Below are positions 56 through 45,793 of a DNA stretch of 64,000 nt, in pieces. The DNA lies in contig NW_026889779.1 of NCBI RefSeq assembly GCF_033153115.1, positions 35,216,001-35,280,000 on the forward strand, read 5' to 3'. This DNA is from Saccostrea echinata. Lineage: Eukaryota. A program made the position numbers and the translations under genes. Below the pieces are notes generated by a model. That model ran no database searches. It had not been told where the DNA came from and saw only the letters and a list, made by a program, of their open reading frames with translations. Each line of letters begins with the position of its first letter. Position 1 is the stretch's first letter.

Positions 56-3000
56 GTGGATTAAAGCTTCCATTGCTGCTCTGTGAGTGTCCAGATGCCA
101 CACTTCCACGGAGTCTTCTGGCACTTTGATCCAGACGTTTATATATATCTTCTGACTGGTATGACTTGAACAGCAATAAGCATTCTCCAACCTCTTCTTG
201 TGAACTAAAAAAGCAATACACTGTATTTTAAAACTGAGTTTTTCCATTCAAATAAAACACTGTACCAGTACCTAAAAATGCTTTTGGATGTGCATGTACA
301 TGAGAGACCTATGGGCCATGACATATTTCTCATTCTTCTTTGCTAGCTGTCACTCAGAAATGGGTAAACTTGAATCAGTGTACATTTTTTTTTTTTTTTT
401 TTTTTTTTTGCCAGCCCCGTTATGCACTTTTTCAAATCAACATTGAAATTACTGAAAATTCTTTAAAACCTTATCAGCATCAGGTCTGCAAGCAGATGGA
501 AATTTCACAGACTAGTTGAATATCTACCCTACATACATTAAAGAATGTTTGCCAATTATTAAATTAACAAAAACATCATATAGAAATAATAAAAGGAAAA
601 AAAACAAGCTAATTCAGAGACTTCGTGTCCTCTACTTTATGATAAAAGATGAGGGTGGAAGAAATGGAAAAATTATGCAGATAGAGAAAGAGAAAAAAGT
701 CAACCTTGACCTTTCAGCTTTTGGCCTCAAAGTTAATAGAAGTCTTTTTTTTAAAGTTAAAGAAATTCATGACCTAAAGTTTCATTGCAAAAGTCTAAAA
801 TTATTATTTGAAAACTACATATGCAATATCTATTTCTAACCTTGACCTTTGACTTTTTGACCTCAAAATCAATATGGGCTTTTTTTTAGGCCATAAGAGC
901 TGTGATATAAAATTTCATTGTAAAAGCTCAAAGGCTTTTAAAGATATCATCCGGAAATAAGTGTTACACACAAACAGAATGTTATGAATTTATGACCTCG
1001 ACCTAATACCTTTTGACCTCAAAATCAATAGCGGTCTTCTTTAGGCCATGGAGAGTTGCAGTATAAAATTTCATTGCAAAAGCTCAAAGGTTTTTTGAGA
1101 TATCATCTGGAAACAAAAGTGTTACACAAAGACAGAATGACAGACAGACAGATGGATGGATGAACAGTTAGACCAAAATTAATATCCCTAACTTTCAGTG
1201 AAAGGGGGGGGGGCAAAGACACAGAGGTTTTAAATCTTATCTTGGTGTAAAAATAATGGTTGAAATCTGTTCCTCTTTGAGGAAGTTTAAAGTTCACAAG
1301 TTTTATAAACAACTAAGGTGCACTCAGAATGGTGAGGGCTTGCTACCTTTCACGAGTCAGCTTCTGTATAACAAACTCCAAACAATTGCTACTGCTCCTG
1401 TGTTTACTCCTGTCTTTAATGAAAGATGGTGTTTGAAGAGAAACTTATTTTGATTGAATGATTTCATTTGTACTCCATTATCATAACATTTATCTTAATT
1501 ATTCAATGTTCAAATTTCATTCAATAATGAAGAAAAAAATTAAGTCCATGAAATGAACATTATTAATTATTTCGCTGTGAAAGTAAATCATGTCCAGTAT
1601 GAATCGAACTTGGGCCAAATATCAGATGTGTCCTATACCATTCAGACCTAATTTTTTTCTGCAATAGAATATAACTCTCAGCATTTAAATTATTGATATA
1701 TTATGAAACATTATAATGAGAATTATTAAGGATTTGGATCTTTTTTCAATAATTTAACCCTGCATGATGGCAATATACATGAAAATTTATATAGAAAATG
1801 AAGTTGCATTTTGCAATTAATCATAGATGTTTTTTTTCATGGGTACATACAGTAAAGCTTGCCTTGTATGTCTTAAACTTACATTTTTGCAAGTTGTACT
1901 ATTCACATGCTTAAGCTAGCCTTAAAAAAATTCCATAAGCCCACAAATTCTTTTTAGTTCAAAAGAGTGCAACCAGTTCTTAAAATAGAAACAGATTTTA
2001 CCAGGACAGTGGCAGTGGCAATAATTTTACTGACCACCTCATTCACACATCTTAAAAGGAGGAACAGGTTTTACAGACACATTCCGAATAATGTCATTAC
2101 AGGACAACTACACATCTTTCAAACATGCTCCATTACATTAGGCCTAGATAAATAAATTGTGTGTTTCTGGTTCCCCAACCGACCCTAAAATATATGAGCC
2201 GACCCTGAAAAATTTATTCGCTGATATTTTTCCGGAAGTAAATGGTTCCATCTTCACTATTAGAAATCCTAATCTTGACCACTGTGGTGTTTGAGAAAAT
2301 GCATATCCTATACACATTAAAAACAAATGCCATCAGTAAGCCTCCCTTTTGGGAAAAAGAAAGGAACTCTTGAATTTTAACAAATAAAATGTTAAAATAA
2401 AATAAAATGTTTTGCCTACCTACCTACCCTATTTTTTCTCGGGCTGGAATAGGAAAATTTATTTATCTTGGCCTTATATAATTACTAATCACCATCTGAA
2501 GGGATGATGCTGGAAGTGTAAAATGTAAACAATGGTTTTCGTAGACTGAAGCCAAGGCAACCTCTAAAGGAAATCTTACCGGCCATTTTCTATAAGGAGG
2601 TTGTTGTCCCGTTTCTCTGGGTTGGCCGTGTACCTTCTGATGCAGGAAATCTTCATACTGACCCACCTTCTCAATTTTGAAATATCCTCATAAACATTAA
2701 CCCTTTCAGCTGTCACTTCCATTATACATTCTCCATCATAATTTAGAAAAATGTTTGGTATTAGGTAAGCTCGAAACATTCCTGAAATCAGATCATTGCA
2801 TCATAAGGCCATTCCAAGTTTTTTCTCTGTTTAGAGTCCACCCATCTTTCAAAAACCTACCTACCTAATCGCAAAAAAACCACACAGGCCAAAAAATAAA
2901 ACACAGGCTTTATAGTCTTAAAAATGATGTCATTCACAGCATTTGATTTCGTAAATCTAATTTTTCTCGAAGAAAAATCTATTCTTTAGCACAATCAAGG

Positions 3001-6000
3001 TATTAAATGCTTAAAATAAGCCTAATATGATATACTGTAGACAAATACTTACAGAAATTGATATAATTAAAAGAATTTTAAAGATTTTGACCAGAATAAT
3101 CAATTTTAAGGCTCCTGATTTTGTTTTTTTTTCTGATTTGGGGTGTCAAAAACCAAGGCACATGTGGACGCTAAACATAGAAAAAAGTTGGAATTGCCTT
3201 ATTTAAAAAGAACAAAGTATGATAGGGCTCATCCTTAGTTACAGAAATAGGGCTATATTAATATGGTCAAAAATGTCTTGTTCAATTAACTAATGAATTA
3301 AATCAAATTTATTTAAAAATCAAATACTCAAAATAAATCAACATCATGCAATGATGTGCCAGGCATTGTTTACTTAAATGGTGTCCCAATTTTCTTTTTT
3401 TCTTTTCTTAATCATATGAACATGGACAATTTAACAGTAAACACACAAACTGAAATTTCAAAAATGCAAATGAATGTACACCTAATATGTCTTGTCAATG
3501 TAAGAAAAACTTCTGACTTAAAAATGGTAATTAAAACTTATGAAATCACGTTTCAAACGGTTTGTCTTATTCAATCATCACTGAAACTTACCCACTGGAA
3601 GAGTATCACTTTTACCAGCCTCTGCCTGCAATTTTTGAAGCCAGTCATCTGCATCTAAAAATTAATGATGACATTTTACAGGTATAAAATGCTTTAATTT
3701 GATAGCACTAATGTTTTTTCTTTCTTTCTTTCTTTTTTTTGAAACACTTTGTTTGGTCTGTTTAATCTACAATAATTATACATTTCACATGAATATAAAA
3801 AAAAAAAAATGCCCAAGAAAGAAAACCTTTCTTTGAAACATGTTAAAAAATCTTTTTCCTCCTGTTTGCCATTTTGAGAACAAATTAATTCTATAAAGTG
3901 TCTCTGTCTGTATTCAACCTGCTACTGTCTATAGATGGACCAATACAAAAAATGCCTAAAACATGTACATAAAGCTTATTAACATGTTAATTTCATATTT
4001 TCCTGCTTATGACCTTGTCAAAATGACCCTGGCTCATGGCAAACCATAAGCCATTAAGGTCAAACATAAAGCTTCATAATATGTACCAGTACATGTACTT
4101 ACATCTGTTGTAGTTTTTTTTTTAAATAATCATAGACAAGTTTATTACTGATACAAGCCATACATTAATTAAGAAACTTTTTGGGTTCAGCATTAACCTC
4201 TTGTGTTTCCAAGCAACAAAGCCATTACCCTTCATGATCTGAGAGAAAATTTTACTTCTCCTCATAGGACTTTAACAAGGTCACTGAGAACCTTTTGTGT
4301 GTGATATGTTTCAACTTCTGTTCTCAACTAGAAATCTGACCAGTCAGCAAGGGCCCCGCCGAGGGGTAGAAATAGGGTGCAGATTAGGGGATGAGAATTT
4401 TACTTGATTCCAAAAAATTTAAAATATATAAAGAATAAGCAACAGCAACTGCTAAATATCCAACAATCTGTAAATAGTATCCTTGTATTTACATAAGGCA
4501 GTAAAAAACATCATATCTATAATAACTCAATTAAATGTATATTTAAAAATGAATGAAGCATGTGTTTTCTAAAATGCCAGCCTTCAGTGAATGCAAATAT
4601 CACCCAGGCTTGACCTTAACTTCAAAACAAATATCAGTTGCAGACAAACTTAAGGTGTTAATTAATCTTAAGGTGACAGAAAGATAACCCTCTAAAATAT
4701 TCTGCAAACCAGCAAGATAATCAAACCCATGGGATTAATTATACTGCTCTCTCAACCTTTTCTAAGTTTACAATAAGAACTTTTTCAGCAATGATAGAAT
4801 GAGGTTATTATCTGAATACCTGTTAAAATAATTAGTATTCTTAAATTTACATAAGGCAGAAAAAAAAGAAAAAAAGGAAGTAATAATAAAAACAATATCT
4901 TTATCTATATCTTGTTTTTAGAATTCAATAAAATCATAACTCATTGTGTATTTTAACAAAATAAAGTATAAACATTATTTAAACCCACATTTCAGAGAAT
5001 GTAAACATCATTCAGAATTGACCTTAACTTCAAAACAAACTTCATTTGCAGACAGAGGTGTTAATTAATCTCAATGTGGCAGATAAAGATAAATGCTTTG
5101 GATTTTCTTCAAGAGGAAAGTTAATTAATCCCAAGAGACTCATTGCAGCCTTTCATAGTTTACAATAGGAACATTCTCAGCAGTTATCTCTCTTTGCCAA
5201 TTCACTCTTATATAAAGTTAAGGAATATACCCCACCACCCCAGCTCCAAACCTGATGACATAGAGAACCAAACTTAGCATCAAAATATGTCTTACTGCCT
5301 ATTCAACCAACATACCAAATTTAAACTTAATTGGTCAACCCTAAAAAAAGTTATTAGAAGAAAAACAGAAAATTTGTGGACGGAAGAATGACAGACGGAC
5401 AGACAGACAGACAGACAGAGTGATTACTATAGGGCACCCGCAAATCCTTGCCGGGCCCTAATTACAAAATTATGGCATGGATATGCTATGCACTAAGAGA
5501 TCAACAAATCCCCCCCCCCAGCAAAGAAATTGTTCACAGGGACATGCATATGATGGGCATCTCTATAGGTATTTGATACTATCTCTATAACTATTTGATA
5601 CTATCTCTATAACTATTTGATACTACATGTATCTCTATAACTATTTGATACCTACCATCATTACATATAAACTGTCGAACTTCACCCCCAGCCAGGGAGA
5701 TTGTGATGCCATGATCTTCATTAAACGACAACCTTACAACCGTTGTCACATCCTGCATGCGAATAAATGAAAGCGGCTTCTCCTCCCGGAACCCCCTCTC
5801 ATCTGCATACTTCACAAATCTTGTTGGACCTTTACTGGAAGGGGCAAACAGAACAACATAGCGTTTCCTCCAAATCTAATGAAAAGAATGTATGAAAAAA
5901 ATAGTCATGAGCTAGGTTCCCAATGTTTTTTTTTCTATGCCTTTTTCCCCCTTCATTTTCACCACTTAAAATCTTATTTCCCCTTAATCTTTATCATGCT

Positions 6001-6694
6001 GCTATAATAAACAAACTGTATATTAAATGCAAGAAGCATGGAAGTGAAATTGGGAACAATTTATTAAGAAGTTGTAAACATGTACATGATGTAATAGTAA
6101 GAATTTTTTTGTTTCTTAGAGTCTTTTTTATCAAATTTTACTATTCTGAAAAAGTGAACTAGGCATAATAACTATGACAATCAATAATATACCAATGGTT
6201 ATTGTCAACACTGAAATACCTGGTTTGCACTTACATTTAAATGTACATATAGCTCTTAGGCATACACGTATTACATTCACTGTGAAATTTCCTAGTTCTC
6301 CCATTTAATATGTGGATAAACACAAATGCCTTTTGCCCTTTTCTTTTCACTTCTGCTTCAAGAAGCAGGAATTATTTACTTTTTTAACTATTGATTTTTC
6401 AATCCAAATCCAGGAAGAAATTCAAAAGGAATAGCATAATACATACAATCATACATAAATTAAATTAAAGTTTACATATTACAGTGTATTATGCTCATAT
6501 ATCCAGGAAGAACGCTGGGATTAAGTTAGGTTTTTTTTTTCAGTTAAGTGAAATCATATATTAACATGTGTAAGTCTGTATGCACAAGTATAATATACAC
6601 TCACCCCAAAGGTCTTGCTTTTCATGCGAACCTCCCCCTCTTTTAAGATAATGGACTGTTCCACTCCTTGGTAACCACCATCACCACCATTCAT
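56..6694 (-). CDS. Docking protein (DOK4/5/6-like) PH + IRS-type PTB adaptor, 3'-partial
   Basis: Coding exons 6694-6605, 5875-5656, 3654-3592, 2781-2580 and 204-56, all GT-AG with consistent phases (0,1,1,2). Translation MNGGDGGYQGVEQSIILKEGEVRMKSKTFG/IWRKRYVVLFAPSSKGPTRFVKY...DADDWLQKL matches a DOK-type PH domain; ...IRRY...LLIENGRSQEEVGECLLLFKSYQSEDIYKRL is PTB-like. The donor at 55 shows the gene continues beyond the window. Paralogue not assignable. Confidence 0.8.
700..1212 (+). mobile_element. Interspersed tandem-unit element (family shared with 53295-54068)
   Basis: Units containing GACCTCAAAATCAATA..TTTCATTGCAAAAGCTC, then (GACA)n and AAATTAATATCCC..CAGTGAAAGGGG. Confidence 0.7.
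2138..2476. mobile_element. MITE (AGGCC...GGCCT termini)
   Basis: Terminal inverted repeats AGGCCTAGATAAATAAATT / AATTTATTTATCTTGGCCT. Confidence 0.7.
2804..3201. mobile_element. MITE (TAAGGC...GCCTTA termini)
   Basis: Imperfect ~35-bp TIRs TAAGGCCATTCCAAGTTTTTTCTCTGTTTAG / CTAAACATAGAAAAAAGTTGGAATTGCCTTA. Confidence 0.75.
4325..5462. mobile_element. Probable Helentron-like element with two diverged ~400-bp internal units
   Basis: AACTAGAAA..GGGCCCCGC at the start; (GACA)n plus TAGGGCACCCGC..GGGCCCTA at the end; duplicated motifs TTTACATAAGGCAG (~4488, 4846) and TTGACCTTAACTTCAAAACAAA (~4610, 5018). Confidence 0.55.
5569..5650. repeat. 22-bp tandem repeat adjoining the DOK exon donor
   Basis: About 3.5 copies of TATTTGATACTATCTCTATAAC. 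Confidence 0.85.
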
Positions 6695-7315
6695 CTTCAA
6701 ACATTATAACAAAGTGCACTTCAAAAAAGACATCCTGATAAAAAAAAAATAATAATAATTATTATCACGAAAAGTTCATAATAAATTTAATAATTAATAA
6801 AAATTCATAACGAGTGCATTATGAAGACGTTGATCCTGTTCAAAACATTATTTACAATACTGAAATTACCAGATAATTGTCAATTAAAAGTCCCCAACTC
6901 TAGGCTGCTTGTCAACAAGAGAATTAGTTTTTGACTCCGTTATTCATTCAAGAAAATGTTGAAGTAATATTAGCATCACTCACCCATATACATGTACATA
7001 AATAAACAAAAATGTCATCTCAATGACACTACATGTACACATATATGATATATATGTATAAAACATATAAACAGATGATACTATAGCACATGAATTTCCT
7101 AATTGTCAGTCAAAGGCTGTGATTTTTTTCACATGACAGAACTTGATCATTAGCATGTTACTTGTAAGTTTTAAAGCAATCACATGTCAATTTTCTAATG
7201 TAACAATAATTACTTTAATACAAAATTATATTGAACACAACACATAAACATGAGATTGTGTTTCACGTGACACTGATATTGTAAATGCCAGCTATCATAC
7301 TCCATCATTATGAAA

Positions 7316-7497
7316 TACAGTTGAACTTCAGTAATATCTCGAACACTGATATCTCGAATACCATGGATATGTCGAAGTGATTTGGAAGTCCCAACCCCTT
7401 ATTCTTTAAGTATTTTACCCCAGTTATCTTGAATCCTCGGTTATCTCCAAGTTTTTCCTTGCTTCCATTGAGTTTGAGATAACAAGGTTTGACTGTA
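7316..7497. mobile_element. Tc1/mariner (pogo-like) MITE
   Basis: TA-CAGTTGAACTT...AAGGTTTGACTG-TA, with TA flanks. Confidence 0.7.
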
Positions 7498-8691
7498 CTT
7501 CCAAAACATCACATTACCTTAAGTTTCAATTAATATGTCGACATTTTCTCTTCAGAAAACTCCCCGTATATGAGACTATTTTCATTTTTTTTTTACTTTA
7601 TATCACACACATTTTATTCAAGTTGAAGATTTCACCTGTGTATGTAAGTACCTGTGCTTATAAGTGTATGTATAAGGACATGTACTCTACACTCTCAAGG
7701 ACTATTATAGGCACTACACGATTACAAAGGAGTGATTGTGAATGAACAATTGAGTTACATTATAAACTGCTTTATTAGTTTTACCTTTATTCTTCTCATA
7801 TTTTTTTTATTGTATCAAATTATATATTTCTTGTCTTTTTGTGGGATGACAAAAATTATGAAATTAACACTGTAGAAGTGAAAGTATCTTAATTAAAGAG
7901 CAGATTGATATATATGGTGAAAAATGAAATGGATTTAAAAGGGGATAAACACAGATTTTTTTTCCCCTTCTAGAAACTGCATGAATAACCAGTAAAAGTT
8001 ACCTGTATAGTGACTACCAGTATATAAATAGTGTGACAACTATACCAGTACATCATGGGACTGTATTGTATGTCAAAATTCCACCACACATTTAATAAAG
8101 TGCACTGCTAGGTTACATGACATGCTTAAATTTGGAACTACATGATGCATATCTGTTTATGCATATTCATAGTCACCAACTGTGACCTTGTCATTTGCAA
8201 GTACAATGGAACATGGAATAAAGTTACTGTAAACATGTCTTAAGCTCCACATATTAATGCAAAGATTTACACGTAAACAAAAAGAGCTTTCTCTTTATTG
8301 TTATCTATTGAAAGAATCACTGCTAAAAAAGCAAAATTCATTGTTTAATGCTCCAATGCTTCACTATGTTAAGGATTTGGCCTGGAAACAATTTGATTAG
8401 CTATAGCTAGTATTGAATTCCAAAATGAGGTCACAATGACCTTTTGGGGGCCATGATATAACCCCACCCCACCCACCCCTTTCAAGATCATCAAATGGCA
8501 AGTATTCCTAGTCCTCCTAGTGTGCAAGATATGAACCTAACATGATATTTGACTATGTATCACTGTAAAATTCCCACAAATATGTTTTAGCAACAACAAA
8601 AAATTAATTTGAAAATACACATGGTAGAACATAGTTACCAAGATTTTGCTATCTATAAATATTCATTATTGTATCTGCCATCAAGAATTAG

Positions 8692-9097
8692 TAGGGCTGC
8701 ACAATAATATCGATATTCCAGTATATTGCGATTCGTTAACAAAAAATATCGTATACCGATGTTTTTCCAGTACCAATATACCGGCAAAATGATTGGGCTT
8801 TAGATTTATGAAGTAAAATATGAAATTTAAGCAATGTTTTCAATCATGCTAAACAGTACCAAACGGTAAAGGTTTCTGTTGCATTTATTTGCCAAACCGT
8901 AGTAAAATTGAATAATAGAACTTTTTTTGTTACAACATATTTATAAAAGTTTTATACACTCTGCTATAAATGGAGGTTAAAAAAATAAGAAAAGAGCATT
9001 TAAACTCTTATTTAAAATATTGCAATACATATCGCAATACAGTTCCAAATATCGCAATATATTGCAATAGGAGATTTCCAACCGATATTCAGCCCTA
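8692..9097. mobile_element. hAT-like MITE
   Basis: TIRs TAGGGCTG / CAGCCCTA; 8-bp flanks AGAATTAG and ATAATTAG (7/8 match); internal ATCGCAATA repeats. Confidence 0.75.
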
Positions 9098-9634
9098 ATA
9101 ATTAGGGATTTTTCATAATTATTTGTTTTGCAGACATAATATTCAGGCACATAGTAATGAAAAGTTGGAACCTTGCTTGTCAAAGGTTTTATAGGTATCT
9201 AGTCAATTATTTCTGCATTCTGAAGCCCCCTTCCACCACCCCACCCCAACCCGGCCCCCATAAAAATATTATTAATACACTGTATGTGCCTAATCTTCTT
9301 TTTTTTTTTTTTAGGAAATCAATGCAGAAACCATCTCCTTAATATTATTCAATGTAATTCATGTTTCACTTGGAAACCTGTATAACACTACATTATAAAC
9401 AATAAATAGTATAGTTATGTGGAATATGCTATATGGATTAAAATGAAAACTTGTTATATGTTCTGCCATGGAGTATGCACTACTGAATGCAATGTACAGT
9501 TTGCTAAAAAAATTGTAACAGTTCTTTATTTTAAAAACACAAATCTGTCTGAAAATGTATATATTGATATAGATCATATTTCTTCAAGTTACCTGCCGGA
9601 ATTATTACACCGCGAACAAATCCTCACGTCAGGC

Positions 9635-10170
9635 AATCTAATTAAAATTAGATGTTCCGAATCTCAAAGATCTAACAACATCCCATTCGGAGTCACATCA
9701 GAGCGACCTTTTGATTAGCCAATGAAATTGCTGCCTCCAAAATCTTGGCTTATGGTTCGGATGCATTTCTTTTTTCAGTGCTAAACCTAAACGCCCAAGG
9801 AGTTTCGTAGTAAACAAAACATGCATGGCAAAGGCCATGCTATGTATGAATGTGACGTGCGGGATGACTTGTATAGTTTGTGCATTTTCATTTGAGTTAC
9901 TTCAGGTAAGAATGCTAGATTGGAGGACTATACATTTAATTTATACCAAAATTACTTGAATTCAACATAAGACAGACTACTGAGCATCACTAATGTTAAG
10001 ATGTAGCTGTGGAACTAATTTTAGAATCGTACAGGGAAGCTCAAATCTGATTGGCCAAAATGTTCAAGTTTATTTCTAATCAAAAGGTTGCTCTAACGTG
10101 ACCCCAAATGGGATGTTGCTAGATTTTGAGAAGCGGTAGCGGATTCAGAACATCTAATTTTAATTAGATT
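9635..10170. mobile_element. MITE-like element with ~85-bp terminal inverted repeats
   Basis: 9635-9718 is the reverse complement of ~10076-10170, apart from a short indel and substitutions. Confidence 0.75.
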
Positions 10171-10178
10171 ACATGTCA

Positions 10179-10501
10179 GGGGTTCTTAGTCAACATGTTG
10201 CTGGTTGGACCACTGACAAATTTCATTCGATATCTTACAGGCTGACTGCAGCGACGTCTTTCGGAAAAATTACAAATATTGATTGTTTTTCTTACCTCTC
10301 AACCGATCAAACTGCTGGTTTTTTGGTGATAACCAATGTGTAACACATGCATTTTAGGTGTCACCTGATTCCCTTCTCAACCTGTTTACATTATATGTAT
10401 ACTTCAATTTGATTGGTGTTTCACAATGAGAGAAGCAAGCCTGAATAAAACTGAATGAAATTTGTCAGGGGTCTAACAGCACCATGTTGACTCAGGGCCC
10501 C
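10179..10501. mobile_element. MITE (related to 35211-35552)
   Basis: Imperfect ~48-bp TIRs GGGGTTCTTAGTCAACATG.. / ..CATGTTGACTCAGGGCCCC. Confidence 0.7.
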
Positions 10502-10596
10502 AAACACTATGAGGATGCAGTGAACAGAAATATATACAACTCTAGCAATTAATTTAAAATATTTTAAAATGTTGGTGTTTTAGTATCATACCTGTG

Positions 10597-10679
10597 GGAG
10601 CACCTAATGCCAGTTTATGTTTAATAAATACAGGTATTATACCTGTATTTATTAAACATAAACTGGCACTAGGTGCTCC
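10597..10679. repeat. Near-perfect 83-bp palindrome
   Basis: 41-bp arms with one mismatch and a single central base. Confidence 0.9.
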
Positions 10680-12060
10680 TTAAAGCTTACAGTTAGATAA
10701 ATACTGTGTATGTTAGCAAAGGAATCCAATTATATTGAATGGACTCATTAAAGATGCTGGATGCAGTTGTGAACATGATGGTAGAACTTGAGGCACCTGA
10801 ATTTTTATCGATAAGTTGCATATAAGGTCCAACAAAAAACTCTACTCCCTTTTTATAAATATAAGTTGGGGTTATATAGGACTTTAATGACTTTATTTGT
10901 AACTTATTAGGCCTAAATAAAAAAAAAATTAGTACCTATGGTGCAAGAAAAAATGTGTTATGCCCATTTAATTGAAAATAATCTAGCCCAGCGACACATT
11001 CAAAAGTGTGTGGTAGAAGAGAATGAACTCTTACCTTACATCAAAGTTTTCAAGGTGTACTTTGCGGTGTCGTTTTTCATTCTCTTGTTATTTTTGTTTT
11101 CTTGAGACTTGAGTTTTTGGGTTTGCCCACCGGATATCTTTTACGGTATAACGAACCCGATCCAATTTTTAAATTAACACAGTGAACTCATTGCTGAAAT
11201 ATTTCCTGTACCACTTGAATGCAGAATATTTTGTTTGAATAAGCTAAAGGCATGTAAATAAAAGACATGACTAACGTTTTTTAACGAATGAAAGAGTGGA
11301 TAAATAAGTTCAGAGACATGATTATTTATGCATCGTCCAACTATGATCAAATTCATATCATTTATGTAACGTTAGGCCTACAGTTTTTTTTTTTAAAAAT
11401 CCGACAGTAATTATTTTCATTAAGAATTCACAGATAGGATACCAACCAGTTTAAACTTTTTTTTACTCTAAGGATACACTGTACATGTACCGTAGAATAA
11501 GGAAATTTTCCGTTATTGTGATGTTCAAACGGGACGTATAGTCAGAAAGAGAATAAATTTAACATGCTGCCCCCTTCTAAAAGGAAGAAAAATATAAATT
11601 CTAGTCCAGAAGTGTATAACTATCATCCTATCATGTCACCCCCTTTTTTCATAACGAGCCAAACAGTCATAATTAATTTCACATGCAGTTCTTTCCAGAA
11701 AATTTAAAAAAAATACCAATACCGACAAATAAATGAAGTATATATTCCGGTATACTAATGTTTTCAATTTCGTCTTCCAAAGATATACAGAATTTGCTCG
11801 GATATCTCTTTTAGCATATTTGACTTCGTACTGACTTAACAACAGGCTAGATTAAATAAAAATAAAAAGACCGTCGGAAGGGGGTGGGTGGGTACGATCG
11901 CACCCCCTTAAAAAAAAACAATCGAAAATCTATAGTGTTTGAAACAAAGCAATTTTTTAAAAAATTATTTTTGTGTTTATAGTAATGCTGCTTTATTTTG
12001 TTAATTTGAAAAAATGACTTTAGAAATGCATCAGAACCCATCAAAATGGTACCATTTATA

Positions 12061-38624: not shown

Positions 38625-39502
38625 TATTATACCCCCGGATCGAAAGATCCGGGGGTTATATTGTTTTTGTCCTGTCTGTCTGTTTGTCTGTTTATCTGTT
38701 TGTCTGTCTGTCTGTTGTCAACTTTAACCTTGCCCATAACTTTTGATTGGTTGAAGCTATGACTTTCATATTTCACATGTGTATTCCTTGTGACAAGACC
38801 TTTCTTTGGAAACTATCATATTTTACCTTTTGACCTTGACCTTGGAGTTTGACCCACTTTAACAAAATTTTATGAGACTTTAACCTTGGCCATAACTTCT
38901 GAACAGTTGGTGCTTGGGGTTTCAAACTTCACATGTGTATTCTTTGTGGCAAGGCCTTCCTTTGGATACCAAAAACTTTGACCTTTTGACCTTAGAGTTT
39001 GACCTACTTGTGAAAAACTATAATCTTGGCCATAACTTTTGAACAGTTGGTGCTTAGAGTTTCAAACTTCACATGTGTATTTCTTATGACAAGACCTTCC
39101 TCTGGATATCAACCTCTTTGACCTTTTGACCTTGACCTAGGAGTTTGACCTACTTTTGAAAAACTTTAACCTTGGCCATAACTTTTGAACGGTTGATGCT
39201 AGGGCTTTCATACTTCACATATGTAATTCTTGTGACAAGACCTTTCTTTGGATACCAACTTTGACCCTTTGATCTTGACATTTTATTTACTTTTTAAAAA
39301 CTTTAACCTTTGCCATAACTTTTAGACAGTTGAAGCTAGGGCTTTCAAATTTCACAGGTATATTCCTCGTAACAAGACCTTTCTTTGGGTACCAACATTT
39401 TTCATCTTTTGGTCTGGATTTTGACTTGCATTTGAGAAACTTTACTTTAACCTTTGCCATAAGCTGCCATTCGGGGCATCATTATTTCACAAATACATCT
39501 TG

Positions 39503-39503
<1 letters not shown>
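38625..39503 (+). mobile_element. Helentron-like element with ~140-bp internal tandem repeats
   Basis: Terminal hairpin CCCCCGGATC-GAAA-GATCCGGGGG, (TCTG)n, about five units containing AACTTTAACCTTGGCCATAACT, and end GGGGCATC..TTTCACAAATACATCTTGTT. Confidence 0.85.
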
Positions 39504-39534
<31 letters not shown>

Positions 39535-40020: not shown

Positions 40021-42922
40021 ATGGCACAGTATATCCAGGTTAGTGACGAAGAGGGTGACGAGCCGATAGAAATTCCTAGTGAGGATGACGGTTCGTTGTT
40101 GCTCAGCACACTCGCCGCACAGTTTCCGGGGGCATGTGGAATGAAATACAGAAATCCAAGCACTGGAAATTTTCGTGGAATTAGACTATCAGAGGGAAGA
40201 CTGCATCCACCAGATGGAGTTTGGGGAAATTTTGTTTACATTGTTGTATTCCCCAAAGGTTTGTATTGAACAAGGAGTAATTTATATTGGCATTTTTATA
40301 TTTGTTCCTTATTCAATCAGTGAGTCATGCAAGAGATGATATCCAGCAACAAAGTACATTTTTTTTCTGTATATACATACACAGAAGTGACATCTCATGA
40401 AGTTCTTAACATGTTGGTTGCAGTTTAAAAAAAGGATGTAAAGATTGTAACTCTTACAAGACAGCTTGAATAGGTCCGGCACAATTTCTTGATTTAGCTA
40501 AATAGCTTGAATTAGTTATCATTATTTTTATTTATCATTATCATTTTACATTTTTCTTAACCATGCATTTTTTTTATCGTTATCATTTGACTTTTTTCTT
40601 AAATGTGCATTTTTTTTCAGCATGCTAAAAAAAAAAATCACATTTTGGTGCACTGAAAGTTTTCAGCTTTGAACTCTGAATGCATGAGAAAATCATTCAT
40701 CAAATTGCCAGGGCTCTACATTAACTTTTTTTCATACTTGTCCGTTTGGACAAGTGACCAAGACATTTACTTGTCCGAACTTCAACCTCACTTGATATTT
40801 TTCAATAAATAATTCTGTCAACTTGAAAACTATTACTTAAAATAAAGTCCATTTTATGCATGCTTGAGGGATTTGTGATTTTATTGATACATATGACAAA
40901 CACATAAGACAAAATTTTATCTAGACTTTCTGTCCTGACAGCAACATAAATGCTCACAAATGAAACTGTCAACATCAAACAGAATCCAAACTTGGTAAGG
41001 TCCATGCCTTTGCAGTGGTATGCAATTAGTGAACTTCAATCCTGATCAAGTGTGAACTCAATTACATAGTGATTAATATTGGGATTAAAGTTTGGCTTTT
41101 ATGTACTGCTTCAGTCTTTAACCTATTGTTAAACTTTTCACCAGTTGTTCTTTTTATTATTTAGAGGCTTCGTTACATAAAAAAGCACTTGTCCAATCGG
41201 ACAGGTGCCCAGCAATATTCACTTGTCTGTAAATTTTTTTCACTGGTGCCGGACAAGCAGACAAGAGTTAATGTTGAACCCTGATTGCGTCTCCTTTGAG
41301 AGACTTTGTACTCATTGACAAAGTTCTAGAAGTTTTAGGGAGTTATAAAGAATCTGTGACCACACAGTTACTTCTTGAATGAACTTGTATAACATATCAA
41401 CTTGCAGATAATGTGATGATAAAACGCAAAGGAGATGAGGCTGGTGAAAATTCAGTGGCAAAGAATAAATGTGTTGATAAACAGAGATGCAGTGATCTCA
41501 TTGTTCTTGGCTTACCTTGGAAAAGTAATGAAGATGATCTGCGCAGATACTTCTCTTCATTTGGAGAACTGCTTCTTGTACAAGTAAGTTAATTTATTAC
41601 AAAATCATATAAATTTAAAAAAAAAAAAAAAATGCCGGCTTTTGCTCTTTGAGCAATGAGCCTGACTAAAAAAATGTTTTGTTCTTGAAAAAAAATTTTC
41701 TACTTCAGATATTTTTGGTTTTATTAAGATTTGGTGTAATTATGATGAAGTTTTATCTTAAAAAGTATATTTTGTGTAATGGCTTGTTTTTTTAGGTGAA
41801 GAGAGATGTGAAGACAGGAGCATCAAAAGGGTTTGGCTTTATTCGATTTTTAGAGTATGATTCGCAAGTAAAGGTTTTGGCACAAAGACACATGATTGAT
41901 GGAAGATGGTGTGATGTAGCTATTCCAAATTCAAATGCAAGTATTTTCAGTGGAATAATTTGTTTTATACTAATTAATCAAATTTAGAGATCCGTTTCTC
42001 AGTTTTTAAACAATAAAAACATCAAAAATTAAAAGATATCATTTGACATGTCATTATACCATTCCTAGTATTGGCATTTTGCAAAGTCCAAAGACAGTGT
42101 TTTACTTTGATTGCTCATAGATACAGTTTTTTAAGTATGCATTGTGAAAGTAAAAATTCAAATAAAAATTTATTAATTCATTTTATTACATGTACAACTG
42201 TATATATTATTATATAATGCATAATGATGATAATTCATTCTTGGTTTTTTCCTTTCATACAGGAAGGTGCTGCAGAAATGGTTAGCAGAAAAGTTTTTGT
42301 AGCAAGATGCACTGAAGACATAACAGCTGATGACCTAAAAAGTTACTTTTGCAAATATGGGGAAGTGTCCGATGTTTTCATTCCCAAACCCTTCCGAGCA
42401 TTTGCTTTTGTTACTTTTGCAGATCACAGGGTTGCTCGATCTCTTTGTGGGGAAGACCATATTATCAAGGGTGCAAGTGTTCATGTCACCACAGCTGCTC
42501 CCAAAAACGCCGACAGAAATGATAACAGGGGCAGATTTGATCATGGAGGAAGTGGGAGGGGAGGGGGACATGGGGGGTGGAGCCAGCAAGGTAAACCAAT
42601 TGCTACTGTAGGTACAGTTCCACCTGTGCCTGACCCAAACATGGCTAATAGTATAGGCATGAATTTATTGAATTCAGCTGTGTTAGCAGCAGCCCAGGCT
42701 ATGTTACAAAGTCAAGGTCAGTTACCAGCACCCCAACCACAGCCAGTGGGTCAAGGTCATGGGGATCCTTTTGGTGTTCAAACCACAACTGCCAGACAGA
42801 CCCAGCAAACAGGGTTCTTTAGTACTCAGAACTCTGCAGGCTGGGGGACAGCTGACACCAACACATCCGCAGGCGGATATCCCAACTGGGGAGGAAACAG
42901 CCATCAGAGTGGTTGGAGTTAA
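40021..42922 (+). CDS. TARDBP: TAR DNA-binding protein 43 (TDP-43), 404 aa
   Basis: Exons 40021-40258, 41408-41583, 41796-41936 (GC donor), 42263-42922. N-terminal domain [36 protein letters not shown]1 ([26 protein letters not shown]), RRM2 ([27 protein letters not shown]), and a G/Q/N-rich tail with the helix [16 protein letters not shown]. Confidence 0.96.
40709..41283. mobile_element. hAT-like MITE in TARDBP intron 1
   Basis: TIRs CAGGGCTCTACATTAACT / AGTTAATGTTGAACCCTG, subterminal ACTTGTCC repeats, ATTGC on both flanks. Confidence 0.8.
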
Positions 42923-44177
42923 TGTATGGGAGGATACATTGTTTGGTGTGCGTCAGTGTGGTGTTGATTTTTTTACTATGCAGAGTGCTAAGCCTTGTGT
43001 TTATTAGGGCTGGAATGATATGGGAAGACAGACTTCTATGATCCATGCATCTACTGCTTGTAGTATATATCTGTTCCTATATTTTGATTGTATATCAAAA
43101 ATTACATGTATAGCCAAGTCAAATACTTAAGTTATGTTAAATTAATTCTTTTAATTCAAAGACAAAAAAAGTCCCGAACAAATATTTTTCCTCTCGTAAA
43201 AAAAATATCAAAGACTTTATTTTCTCTTTTTTTCTAGGAAATTACTTGGTAATATTGAAAAAAAAATCTAAGCTTTTATCAGTGTAAAGTTGAATTACTG
43301 AACTAAAAAGTATTTTAATGTGCAGAATGTAGCAGAATTTGCAGTCATTGTACCAGGATGTATATTGTTTCACATTTTACTTGTATCATCCCAGCCCTAG
43401 AGTTTAACCATTTATAAGGTCACTACAGCAGTTTCTAGAACTTTGCTTATTCTAAAATGATATTTATCCTTTTTGTTAATTTGCACCATAGGTTTAACAG
43501 TTTTTTTAACACACATAATTATATTGTCCATTCAGAGAAAGTTATTTACACAAACTGACATCTAAACTGTACCTTTTAATTAACACATTGCTCTATAGCA
43601 TATTAACTTATACATTTAAAGAGATTGTTTCACCTTCACTAAAGTGGTGCTTTCAGAGGAGAAATCAGTGCTAAGCACGACAACTTGTTTATCCTTTCAG
43701 AGTTTAAAAGTAATTCATAAGATTTTTAACATGGGAACTTGGTTCCAAGTTTGTTTTTTTTTTTTTGTGTTGCTTAAATATGATCAGAAATCTTAATATG
43801 TACATGTACATAAAATATTATGTGTGGATTTGCATAAATTGTTAATCAGTGTATCTACCTTCAGCATTCCCATTTGTTGTAAATTTTTACGAAAAGTAGC
43901 TTTCTATATTTTCCCTAGCAACCTACTACATGTAGCAGATGCCTAAAATTTTCTAAATTGTTTAAATTTCACCTTTATTTTTTTCTGATGCTGATATTGT
44001 ATTTACTTCTAAATAGATTTTTTGAGATTTGTATTTCAGTATGTAAAACTATTTAACACTGTGTGACCATTATGAAAAGTAATTGGATTATTGGTTGGAC
44101 TGAAATGAACAGAACTTGAAAGATGTAATCTAGACTGAAGTGTGTATTGAGAAAATTTGGAAAAAATTGAATTAATT

Positions 44178-44442
44178 GAATCATGAATGGAATGAACTGA
44201 ATCATGAGTGATCTGGAATGGACTGAATCATGAGTGATCTGGAATGGAATCATGAGTGATCTGGAATGGAATCATGAGTGATCTGGAACAGACTGAATCT
44301 TGAGTGATATGAAATAGAAACTTGAGCAATTTGGAACAGAAACATGAATGATCTGGAATATGAATCATGTGTGATCTGGAGCAGACTGAATCTTGAGTGA
44401 TCTAGAATGGATTCAGTGGTGTATGGATGCTCTGGAATGGAC
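44178..44442 (+). repeat. 22/26-bp minisatellite downstream of the TARDBP stop codon
   Basis: Roughly ten diverging copies of GAATCATGAGTGATCTGGAATG(GACT). Confidence 0.92.
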
Positions 44443-44583
44443 ACAGATGAAGTGTGATTTTGCTTTTATGTTGTATTGTGCAGAATGAATTAAAGGAGAG
44501 TGTATATATGGTGTGCAAAAGTGTTTTGAGTGTTTCTTTTTAGCATTGAAGTCTATGGTAATATCTGTGTTTTTATCTTTCAG

Positions 44584-44597
44584 GGGTACCTCCTTGA
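44584..44597 (+). other. Putative alternative terminal coding exon of TARDBP (…GVPP*)
   Basis: Acceptor TGTGTTTTTATCTTTCAG|G at 44583/44584. Joined to the donor CAAG|GTAAAC at 42590/42591 it reads G-V-P-P-TGA. Not supported by transcript data here. Confidence 0.45.
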
Positions 44598-45793
44598 GGG
44601 TTGAGCATCATTAGAAAGAGACAACTTGCCTAACTCATTGTGCTTAAAATCAATTTAAGGTTAACATGCTTATCATATATTTCTTTTAGCTCGGTGTGGT
44701 AAAACCCGTACAAATTTATGAACAAATACTCTTTCATAATAACACACCTTTTGTTAGGACTTACTAACGTCTTCTCTGCCCGTTGCTATTTAGCAAACTA
44801 AGTGCATGGTTATGATGAGCAAGGGTGCCTCTTCAAAATTTGTGAATTGATTACCCTTGGGTCAGGAGTTTTGGTGTTAAGGAGGGGCCCTATTGATTAT
44901 ATAGTGAAAATGCATTTATTCTTTGAAAATTTTCTTCTCTTCTCCTGGGCATGTAGGAGGTAAACAGAGTACTAAGTTGTAATGATGAGGATTTTTTCTT
45001 TTCTTTTTACAAGATTTGTGAAATTATGGAATACTGGGTCAAGTGTTCTTGTGCTGGGTAGGGTTCTTTTGATATAGGAAATTTGCACTCTACTGAGAAA
45101 GGTTATTCCCTCTTTGCTATTCACCTATGATAATAAATTACTGTATTTGGTAGGTCAAATTGAATAAAAATTAAATAAGAATTTTTATTGTTTAAAATAC
45201 AAAAAGTACTTTCATAGTGTTTAATGGCCAGGTAGACCGTAAATAATAGATAAAATACAAAAAGAAACAAAAATACTAGCACCTTATCTTTGTGTATTAT
45301 ATATTCTTCAAGGACCAAGAAAGGCCTGCGTGTGAGGGAATGTGAAGGGTTTATTCCATGTTCTCAAACACTATTGTATTATATAGTGCACCTAATGATA
45401 ATGACAAATGGGAGTGTATAAATAGAACTATTTTATGATATATAACGGAGTACTAAAATTACCATTTTGTTGATCCCTGATTATCCTATTTCGCTTGCTT
45501 TGGGGCAGCATTTCCTCATCTCTCAGTTTATTTTATTTCATTCTTCAGTGGATCCTTTATAGTGTTGTGTTACACTTAAGTGACCGGTAAGCCCCTTTGG
45601 AATCTTGCTCTCTAAGCCTAAAATTAGCCCTAAAGAACTCCTTTTCAGTTTTACATTAATTAAAGAAATCGTATCATATTTTGACTTTAAGCTTTTTTTT
45701 GTATTTTAGAAAAGAAAAACAATTTAGAAAAACGTACGAAAGGTTATATAATACAAAAGCATAGTATATACCATGGGCCTTAATTTGGGAACG

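What the first reader, a model, noticed from the sequence alone, without database searches (positions are those of the whole stretch)
42581..44615. Candidate TDP-43 autoregulatory splicing switch: long versus tail-less isoform
Seen: a good donor CAAG|GTAAAC (42590/42591) sits inside the last coding exon, after RRM2 and the G-rich stretch but before the conserved A/Q helix. A strong acceptor TTTTTATCTTTCAG| lies at 44583/44584. Joining them removes ~2 kb, including the normal stop codon, and gives a 298-aa protein ending WSQQGVPP*, versus 404 aa unspliced. Established: mammalian TARDBP limits its own level by binding its 3' UTR and promoting splicing there, producing shortened sTDP-43 isoforms; zebrafish tardbpl switches between tail-less and full-length forms. 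Inference: this invertebrate has an equivalent feedback cassette.
Basis: partly seen in the sequence, partly recalled or inferred. Interest (0 to 1): 0.82.

Follow-up and report, generated by a model that had tools for sequence, protein, structure and literature searches.

The report
Oyster TDP-43 gene: unproven tail-skipping splice
The two splice-like sites in this oyster TDP-43 gene exist exactly as described, but four RNA assemblies read straight through both, so the self-limiting switch stays a prediction; the firmer lead is an unusually invariant stretch next to them, rich in TDP-43 binding motifs.

Summary
The window holds the TARDBP (TDP-43) orthologue of an oyster, most likely Saccostrea echinata. 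It has four coding exons (40021-42922, + strand) and encodes 404 aa.

The donor CAAG|GTAAAC sits at 42590/91 and the acceptor TTTCAG|G at 44583/84. Joining them gives ...WSQQGVPP*, 298 aa.

In four RNA assemblies from two studies, both real introns are skipped, yet contigs run unspliced through the donor and through the acceptor, and no 42590^44584 joint appears. Contigs can miss rare isoforms, and the human counterparts are rare too. By a crude score, a pair this good arises by chance about 28% of the time.

Some evidence supports a feedback element:
- The 3'UTR is transcribed to at least 44846.
- 44096-44535 is the window's densest cluster of published TDP-43 hexamers.
- 44074-44640 differs at 1 of 567 bases between the genome's two copies, against 2.5% in other non-coding sequence.
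- A donor at 44659/60, 76 nt past the acceptor, is used in one run.

First readers of this scan noted the same idea on this genome's other copy.

Verdict: plausible, untested.

The parts
40021..40258 (+). Coding exon 1 (TDP-43 N-terminal domain)
   Evidence: Pfam TDP-43_N, E 9e-35. The sequence matches the N-terminus of the oyster proteins.
41408..41583 (+). Coding exon 2 (NLS region and start of RRM1)
   Evidence: RNA joint 41583^41796, GT..AG, in 4/4 runs. Contigs start at 41406.
41796..41936 (+). Coding exon 3 (rest of RRM1), ending at a GC donor
   Evidence: RNA joint 41936^42263, GC..AG, in 4/4 runs.
42263..42922 (+). Coding part of the last exon: RRM2, Gly-rich linker, A/Q helix, tail, and stop codon TAA at 42920-22
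   Evidence: Pfam RRM_1. 100% identical to P0123. Aligned end to end with human TDP-43, E 5e-124.
42587..42596 (+). Candidate alternative donor CAAG|GTAAAC (cut at 42590/91)
   Evidence: Sequence. Crude score 2.77, better than the proven exon-1 donor (0.63) and below the proven exon-2 donor (4.64); the GC donor of exon 3 is not scorable on this scale. Not used in any contig.
42591..44583 (+). Candidate 1993-nt intron spanning the stop codon; retained in all RNA assemblies examined
   Evidence: Contigs X1 42576-44254, X2 42565-43766 and X5 42578-43245 read through the donor. Contigs from 44259 to 44817-44846 (X1-X3) and to 44659 (X5) read through the acceptor.
42923..44846 (+). 3'UTR shown to be transcribed (at least 1.9 kb)
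   Evidence: Contig pieces in 4 runs, while introns 2 and 3 have no depth apart from a trace in X3 (3.16, bin 42070-42223). Published TDP-43 hexamers run at 19.8/kb on the sense strand against 5.2/kb antisense, the top 1.9-kb tile of the window.
44165..44409 (+). Minisatellite of roughly 22-nt units (TGGAATGACTGAATCATGAGTGATC), rich in GAAUG and UGAAU
   Evidence: Tandem Repeats Finder: period 22, 9.3 copies. GAATG at 28.6/kb against 1.2/kb in the window.
44074..44640 (+). Low-divergence block holding the array, an ATTAAA and the candidate acceptor; proposed TDP-43 self-binding region
   Evidence: 1 difference in 567 nt between the two genome copies, against 2.46% in other non-coding parts; P about 1e-5 with boundaries chosen after the fact. 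25 published TDP-43 hexamers in 44096-44535, the top 300-nt peak of the window on either strand.
44489..44530 (+). ATTAAA followed by GU-rich sequence: the only poly(A)-signal-like hexamer between the stop codon and 45131
   Evidence: Hexamer scan. Contigs read through it, so it is not the main 3' end.
44570..44585 (+). Candidate acceptor TTTTTATCTTTCAG|GG (cut at 44583/84)
   Evidence: Sequence. Best-scoring acceptor in 42600-45200 and 23rd of 3336 in the window. Read through in 4/4 runs.
44584..44659 (+). 76-nt unit bounded by the candidate acceptor and a proven donor; it would carry the new stop TGA at 44595-97
   Evidence: Translation VPP*. The donor is used in run X5.
44656..44665 (+). 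3'UTR donor TAAG|GTTAAC (cut at 44659/60), used in one run
   Evidence: The X5 contig covers 44259-44659 and then 76 letters that, in the other genome copy, begin right after ttgcag| inside a repeat insertion about 1.7 kb downstream. X5 has zero depth at 44747-44769.
44794..44948 (.). High-copy repeat in which the transcript contigs end
   Evidence: Depth of 2,600-10,800 in bin 44842-44995, with many loose ends and back-joints.
44949..45760 (.). Stretch of about 811 bp present in the window but absent from the second genome copy
   Evidence: Alignment and BLAST of the two copies.

Best explanation
This is the oyster TARDBP orthologue.

Shown: its default mRNA keeps one long terminal exon, from 42263 to at least 44846. 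That mRNA encodes the 404-aa protein with its low-complexity tail and carries a 3'UTR of about 2 kb. The proposed 1993-nt intron is not removed in the bulk of transcripts.

Inferred: the block 44074-44640 (GAAUG/UG-rich minisatellite, an ATTAAA, and the strong acceptor) is a constrained cis-element. It is most likely a region where TDP-43 binds its own mRNA and influences 3'UTR processing.

Which processing step it controls is open. The tail-less 298-aa isoform is therefore at most a minor or conditional product.
For: The gene is identified by Pfam TDP-43_N (E 9e-35) and RRM_1, 100% identity of exon 4 to P0123, and an end-to-end match to human TDP-43 at E 5e-124 with the RNP motifs LIVLGLPW, KGFGFxRF and RAFAFVTF kept.

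The runs are RNA, because both real introns are skipped in 4/4. The same runs read through 42590/91 and 44583/84 and show no joint between them.

The block 44096-44535 has 25 of the 20 published TDP-43 hexamer types (57/kb against 8.2/kb) and is the top peak of the window on both strands (hexamer list from PMC12586162). The 3'UTR sense strand is the richest 1.9-kb tile of the window.

44074-44640 has 1 difference in 567 nt between the two genome copies, against 2.46% in other non-coding sequence and 0.9% in the coding part of exon 4.

The 3'UTR can be spliced: the donor at 44659/60 is used in X5.

Other invertebrate TDP-43 homologues also carry sense-strand UG-rich clusters downstream of their stop codons.
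Against: No binding or expression experiment is available.

Motif counts in a tandem array are not independent, and the hexamer peak is only 18 against 12-14 for the next peaks.

A related 23-nt minisatellite exists at an unrelated locus on contig C23.

The low-divergence block was delimited after seeing the data. It could reflect gene conversion or collapse of variants rather than selection. RNA runs do show variants at 44168-44197 and at 44565.

3'UTRs in general may be enriched in some of these hexamers, and no matched control set of other genes was available.

Drosophila TBPH showed no autoregulation in one study (PMC3605831).
Confidence: 0.42

Rival explanations
1. When TDP-43 is high, it binds the 3'UTR and promotes removal of 42591-44583. 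This replaces the low-complexity tail with VPP* and yields a 298-aa protein that lowers functional TDP-43. It would be the counterpart of human intron 6 and sTDP-43.
For: Both sites exist. The acceptor is the best in the 3'UTR, and the donor scores above the proven exon-1 donor but below the proven exon-2 donor. The donor lies in the Gly-rich linker, about 13-16 residues C-terminal of the human intron-6 donors by alignment (PMC4937342). The motif-rich invariant block lies inside the candidate intron next to the acceptor. A used donor 76 nt downstream gives a layout like the human cryptic exon 7 followed by intron 7 (PMC12987623). Annotated gastropod TDP-43 isoforms end inside the tail-coding region.
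Against: No junction contig appears in four RNA assemblies from two studies, and the contigs do not branch at 44584. No roughly 298-aa isoform is among the listed oyster members. A pair this good is expected by chance about 28% of the time, and a better same-phase donor exists at 42716. The downstream exon joined to 44659 lies in a repeat insertion found in only one copy, so that part looks recent.
Confidence: 0.15
2. Nothing regulatory. The donor and acceptor are chance look-alikes inside a constitutive long last exon. The array is an ordinary minisatellite and the quiet stretch between the copies is a sampling or conversion effect.
For: Chance estimate of 0.28 for the pair. All RNA contigs are unspliced there. 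A similar minisatellite lies elsewhere in the genome. The boundaries of the low-divergence block were chosen after the fact. No TBPH autoregulation was seen in flies (PMC3605831).
Against: The window's densest cluster of TDP-43 motifs, on the sense strand of TDP-43's own 3'UTR, coincides with the least divergent non-coding stretch of the locus. Tandem arrays usually vary more, not less. Sense-strand UG-rich clusters recur in 3' regions of other invertebrate homologues.
Confidence: 0.33
3. A repressed cryptic splice site. TDP-43 bound to the UG/GAAUG block silences the adjacent strong acceptor and the 76-nt unit 44584-44659, as it silences cryptic exons flanked by UG-rich sequence in vertebrates. 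The junction would then appear only when TDP-43 is low, which is the opposite sign to a homeostatic switch.
For: The binding-motif block ends within about 70 nt of the acceptor. The acceptor is strong yet unused in normal tissue RNA. De-repression of cryptic exons on TDP-43 loss is established (PMC12586162 abstract; the CFTR exon 9 UG-repeat example is from my own knowledge).
Against: No data exist under TDP-43 depletion. This would give positive rather than negative feedback, which has no obvious benefit. It rests on the same unproven binding.
Confidence: 0.1

Closest known systems
Human and mouse TARDBP autoregulation (TDPBR, alternative introns 6 and 7, sites pA1/pA2/pA4)
   Same: Both have a long last exon that encodes the disordered tail and carries a long 3'UTR. 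Both have a cluster of UG/GAAUG-type motifs in the 3'UTR. Both have a donor-like site in the Gly-rich linker after RRM2 and an acceptor in the 3'UTR, so that splicing would remove the tail and the normal stop. In both, a short unit is followed by a further 3'UTR donor. The poly(A)-like signal lies inside the candidate intron.
   Different: The oyster junction is not observed. The motif block is a 22-nt minisatellite lying upstream of the acceptor, in the intron-6-like interval, whereas the human TDPBR lies in intron 7. The ATTAAA is not the main 3' end. The only downstream exon seen lies in a repeat insertion present in one copy. The new tail is 3 residues instead of 18. Dependence on TDP-43 level is untested.
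sTDP-43 / TDP-S6 short isoforms of mammals
   Same: The predicted product keeps the N-terminal domain, the NLS and both RRMs, and loses the low-complexity domain.
   Different: It is purely predicted here. Its unique tail is VPP, not the 18-residue KVVL-type tail that drives cytoplasmic localisation in humans.
Zebrafish tardbpl (303-aa tail-less default, with a tailed splice variant induced on loss of tardbp)
   Same: Alternative 3' splicing decides whether the tail is present.
   Different: In zebrafish the tail-less form is the default of a paralogue. In the oyster the tailed form is the default, and the second oyster paralogue (contig C54, 47.9 Mb) also encodes a full tail.
Annotated short TDP-43 isoforms of gastropods (Aplysia X4, Physella X2, Gigantopelta X1/X2, a Logan-derived 323-aa form)
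   Same: They are molluscan TDP-43 proteins that diverge from the long form inside the tail-coding region.
   Different: They are from different genes or paralogues and break at different positions. No DNA was available to see their splice sites, and none is from an oyster.

Membership tests
TDP-43 / TARDBP protein family | N-terminal TDP-43_N domain | tested here: met
   PF18694, E 9.2e-35, full length 1-74/74.
TDP-43 / TARDBP protein family | Two RRMs with the TDP-43 RNP motifs | tested here: met
   RRM_1 hits on exons 2, 3 and 4. Match to 4BS2 (human RRM1-2 bound to RNA) at E 5e-76. [16 protein letters not shown] and RAFAFVTF are kept.
TDP-43 / TARDBP protein family | C-terminal Gly/Gln/Asn-rich tail with the conserved A/Q helix | tested here: met
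   End-to-end alignment 1-403 to human 1-412, including ...[12 protein letters not shown] against ...AMMAAAQAALQS.
Vertebrate-type TARDBP autoregulatory cassette | UG-rich TDP-43 binding region in the gene's own 3'UTR | tested here: inconclusive
   The motif cluster is present and is top-ranked in the window. Binding itself cannot be tested with these tools.
Vertebrate-type TARDBP autoregulatory cassette | Alternative intron from the tail-coding region to the 3'UTR is actually spliced | tested here: not met
   No 42590^44584 joint in four RNA assemblies, and contigs read through both sites. Sensitivity is low because contigs drop rare forms.
Vertebrate-type TARDBP autoregulatory cassette | A 3'UTR intron that contains the main proximal poly(A) site | tested here: inconclusive
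   An ATTAAA at 44489 lies inside the candidate intron but is read through. A real 3'UTR donor at 44659/60 is used in one run only.
Vertebrate-type TARDBP autoregulatory cassette | Isoform ratio or mRNA level responds to TDP-43 dosage | not testable with these tools
   This needs knockdown or overexpression in oyster cells or a minigene.
Vertebrate-type TARDBP autoregulatory cassette | Conservation of the splice sites and the binding region in related species | not tested
The metagenome scan returned no oyster locus. Only the second copy in the same genome could be compared; both sites are identical there, but overall identity is about 98%.

The most novel reading that the evidence does not exclude
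A lophotrochozoan TDP-43 gene carries a working counterpart of the vertebrate self-limiting circuit. TDP-43 binds a constrained GAAUG/UG minisatellite in its own 3'UTR and triggers removal of an intron that spans the stop codon, giving a tail-less protein or an unstable mRNA. TDP-43 autoregulation would then be either as old as the bilaterians or have evolved twice.
Probability: 0.15. Interest if true: 0.75.

Novelty: new variant of a known kind. Interest (0 to 1): 0.45.

Why it matters
TDP-43 dosage control is central to ALS and FTD biology. In the literature I could search, it is described mechanistically only in vertebrates, and one fly study saw no autoregulation of TBPH (PMC3605831).

A mollusc with a self-binding 3'UTR platform, and possibly a tail-skipping intron, would show whether the circuit is ancient or convergent. 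It would also offer a simple repetitive binding platform for study.

The locus comes with natural variants that change 3'UTR structure and splicing: a repeat insertion and an indel of about 811 bp. These could serve as natural experiments.

If the sites are only chance look-alikes, the case is a useful caution. Good-looking splice sites in AT-rich 3'UTRs are common.

Tried and rejected
- **Orthologous loci.** No cross-species test of the sites was possible.
- **Metagenome scan.** It returned 35 TDP-43-like loci but none close to oysters.
- **Short oyster isoform in the protein collection.** None was among the 15 cluster members listed, out of 68. Short forms would be hidden inside the 90% cluster, so this is weak evidence.
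- **Joined sequence.** Frames were checked piece by piece.
- **Contig gap at 42495-42578.** I considered it as a sign of branching at the donor and rejected that. Its ends differ between runs, and two of them sit one base before differences between the two genome copies at 42496 and 42508.
- **Loose end at 44816, seen in all runs.** It belongs to other copies of the high-copy repeat and is absent from the window.
- **Repeat insertion in the second copy.** It has no long ORF; the longest is 110 aa.
- **Rfam.** No hit in 42500-46500.
- **Paralogue B.** Its 3' region has no tandem array and only mild hexamer excess.


Full report
**What is in the sequence**

The stretch lies in the last exon and 3'UTR of a TDP-43 (TARDBP) gene on the + strand.
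- Exon 1 (40021-40258) matches Pfam TDP-43_N at E 9e-35. Exons 2 to 4 carry RRM_1 hits.
- The exon-4 translation is 100% identical to a 404-aa protein that a source names 'TAR DNA-binding protein 43-like isoform X2 [Saccostrea echinata]'.
- That protein's contig length, 69,717,260, equals the length of contig C54 of the window's own assembly. The genome is therefore most likely S. echinata.
- The full protein aligns end to end with human TDP-43 at E 5e-124. It matches the RNA-bound RRM1-2 structure 4BS2 at E 5e-76, with the RNP motifs intact. A preference for UG-rich RNA is therefore a reasonable inference.

**Check of the observation**

- The donor CAAG|GTAAAC is cut at 42590/91 and the acceptor TTTTTATCTTTCAG|G at 44583/84, exactly as stated.
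- Window 42263-42589 ends ...GGHGGWSQQ. G42590 plus GG44584-85 makes Gly, and 44586 onward reads VPP*.
- With exons of 238, 176 and 141 nt, this gives 298 aa, against 404 aa unspliced.
- I checked frames piece by piece. I did not build or search the joined sequence.

**Is the pair more than chance?**

I scored the sites with a crude consensus matrix. The frequencies are from my own knowledge and were used only for ranking.
- The donor ranks 82nd of 3281 GT sites and the acceptor 23rd of 3336 AG sites on this strand.
- The acceptor is the best in 42600-45200. A better donor in the same codon phase sits at 42716, and it would give the same GVPP* ending.
- From window-wide rates, the chance of such a pair in these intervals is about 0.28.
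- The sites are credible but not remarkable.

**RNA evidence**

Fourteen runs were listed for the stretch and I laid four of them. X1-X3 come from one study and X5 from another. All are Logan contigs.
- They are RNA. The joints 41583^41796 (GT..AG) and 41936^42263 (GC..AG) appear in 4/4, and intron bins have no depth apart from a trace in X3 (3.16, bin 42070-42223).
- The same runs read straight through the candidate donor (X1 42576-44254, X2 42565-43766, X5 42578-43245).
- They also read straight through the acceptor: contigs from 44259 run to 44817-44846 in X1-X3 and to 44659 in X5.
- No 42590^44584 joint is listed.
- The contig gap around 42495-42578 has different ends in each run. Two of those ends (42495 in X3, 42507 in X5) sit one base before differences between the two genome copies at 42496 and 42508. 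This looks like heterozygosity rather than a fixed branch point.
- The default mRNA is therefore unspliced here, with a 3'UTR of at least 1.9 kb.
- Contigs drop rare variants. Human short-isoform transcripts can be 100-1000 times rarer than the full-length form (PMC12987623). The result is negative but not a refutation.

**Annotation evidence**

The 90% protein cluster lists oyster isoforms of 397-404 aa, from S. echinata, S. cucullata, C. virginica and O. edulis, and none near 298 aa. Only 15 of its 68 members were shown.

Several gastropod entries do end inside the tail-coding region: Aplysia X4, Physella X2, Gigantopelta X1 and X2, and a 323-aa Logan form. Tail-affecting isoforms are therefore annotated in molluscs, but at other positions and in other genes.

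**What stands out next to the acceptor**

A 22-nt minisatellite of 9.3 copies at 44165-44409 is rich in GAAUG and UGAAU.
- I used the 20 TDP-43 hexamers quoted in PMC12586162 as a set fixed in advance. The stretch 44096-44535 holds 25 hits, 57/kb against 8.2/kb.
- It is the top 300-nt peak of the window on either strand: 18 hits, against 12-14 for the next peaks.
- The 3'UTR sense strand has 19.8/kb against 5.2/kb antisense and is the top 1.9-kb tile of the window.

The genome holds a second copy of the locus on contig C54 at about 98% identity.
- RNA runs carry one type or the other, as alleles would.
- Between the copies, 44074-44640 shows 1 difference in 567 nt. Other non-coding parts show 2.46% and the coding part of exon 4 shows 0.9%.
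- That gives P about 1e-5, with boundaries chosen after seeing the data.
- This block holds the array, the only poly(A)-like hexamer between the stop and 45131 (ATTAAA at 44489, followed by GU-rich sequence), and the acceptor.

A tandem array that is quieter than coding sequence suggests constraint. Caveats:
- Motif hits in repeats are not independent.
- A related 23-nt array exists on contig C23.
- RNA runs do show variants at 44168-44197 and at 44565.

**A real splice in the 3'UTR**

In run X5, a contig covers 44259-44659 and then continues with 76 letters that are not in the window.
- The window reads AAG|GTTAAC at 44659/60.
- The foreign letters occur in the C54 copy immediately after ttgcag|, inside a 1186-bp repeat insertion about 1.7 kb downstream. 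The window lacks that insertion.
- X5 has zero depth at 44747-44769.
- GT and AG on the two sides make splicing far more likely than a DNA rearrangement.

The donor at 44659/60 is therefore functional. The 76 nt from the candidate acceptor to this donor have the anatomy of a small exon carrying the new stop. This recalls the human 'cryptic exon 7' followed by intron 7 (PMC12987623, PMC4937342). The partner exon lies in an insertion found in one copy only, so this particular splice looks recent and incidental.

**Wider comparison**

The metagenome scan gave no oyster locus. In most of the invertebrate TDP-43-like loci it did return, the sense strand downstream of the stop carries more TDP-43 hexamers than the antisense strand.
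- L019 has 38 against 5.9 per kb.
- L031 has a (GT)26 run about 370 nt after its stop.
- Counting non-redundant loci by eye, about 14 favour the sense strand and 4 do not.
- There is no control set of other genes' 3'UTRs, so this is only suggestive.

In flies, one study found no autoregulation of TBPH (PMC3605831).

**Conclusion**

The switch is not shown.

I put about 0.15 on the exact 42590^44584 switch. I put about 0.4 on a TDP-43 self-binding block that controls some 3'UTR processing step, and about a third on no regulation at all.

A fourth reading is that the block silences the strong acceptor, as TDP-43 silences cryptic exons. That would fit the acceptor being unused in normal tissue.

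**Limits**

- Read laying allowed one call, and on contigs only.

Noticed in passing
window 41936-41941 and 42262-42267: Intron 3 is a GC-AG intron (AAT|GCAAGT ... ACAG|G) in all four RNA runs. A GT donor 4 nt downstream, paired with an AG acceptor 4 nt downstream, keeps the frame and explains the annotated isoform pair NSN-EG-AAEM and NSN-AS-AAEM, both 404 aa.
   Followed up: partly
window 44659/44660; L009 about 1501-1540 (- strand): A 3'UTR donor AAG|GTTAAC is spliced in run X5 to an exon that starts after ttgcag| inside a 1186-bp repeat insertion. The insertion is present only in the second genome copy, and the repeat family has at least 100 copies genome-wide. X5 shows no depth just downstream of the donor.
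   Followed up: partly
window 44794-44948 and 44949-45760: A high-copy expressed repeat (depth in the thousands) ends the TDP-43 contigs. Directly after it, about 811 bp are present in the window but missing from the second copy. This stretch holds the first AATAAA signals (45132, 45163).
   Followed up: partly
G000 C54:27970629-27976809 (L002, L013): A second copy of the whole gene at about 98% identity, including introns. RNA runs carry one type or the other, as alleles would. Intron 2 is strikingly divergent (8%) compared with about 2% elsewhere.
   Followed up: partly
G000 C54:47907617-47911768 (L015, L003, L016) and C42:4877426: A second TDP-43 paralogue whose last exon encodes a 255-aa open frame (from its first ATG) with a full tail ending ...SGAWN, closer to a gastropod type. 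Its 3' region has no tandem array and only mild excess of TDP-43 hexamers.
   Followed up: partly
G000 C23:8447821-8448450 (L004 1232-1861): A 27-copy, 23-nt minisatellite whose unit shares GATCTGGAATGG with the TARDBP 3'UTR array. The array type is therefore not unique to this gene.
   Followed up: partly
L019 3026-3869; L031 2090-2160; L017-L050: 3' regions of many invertebrate TDP-43 homologues from metagenomes carry sense-strand UG/GAAUG-rich clusters, including a (GT)26 run. This hints that self-binding sites in the 3'UTR are widespread outside vertebrates.
   Followed up: partly
L028 (ORF end at 1214) and protein P0059: A metatranscriptome contig encodes a TDP-43 tail (...SSKWWSHQWGPFGSGHYHCYSA) resembling the frameshifted tail of Physella acuta isoform X2. 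This suggests a conserved alternative-frame tail in heterobranch gastropods.
   Followed up: no
window 38720-39505 (-) and 47036-47860 (+): Related tandem repeats of roughly 140 bp lie on both sides of the gene in opposite orientation.
   Followed up: no
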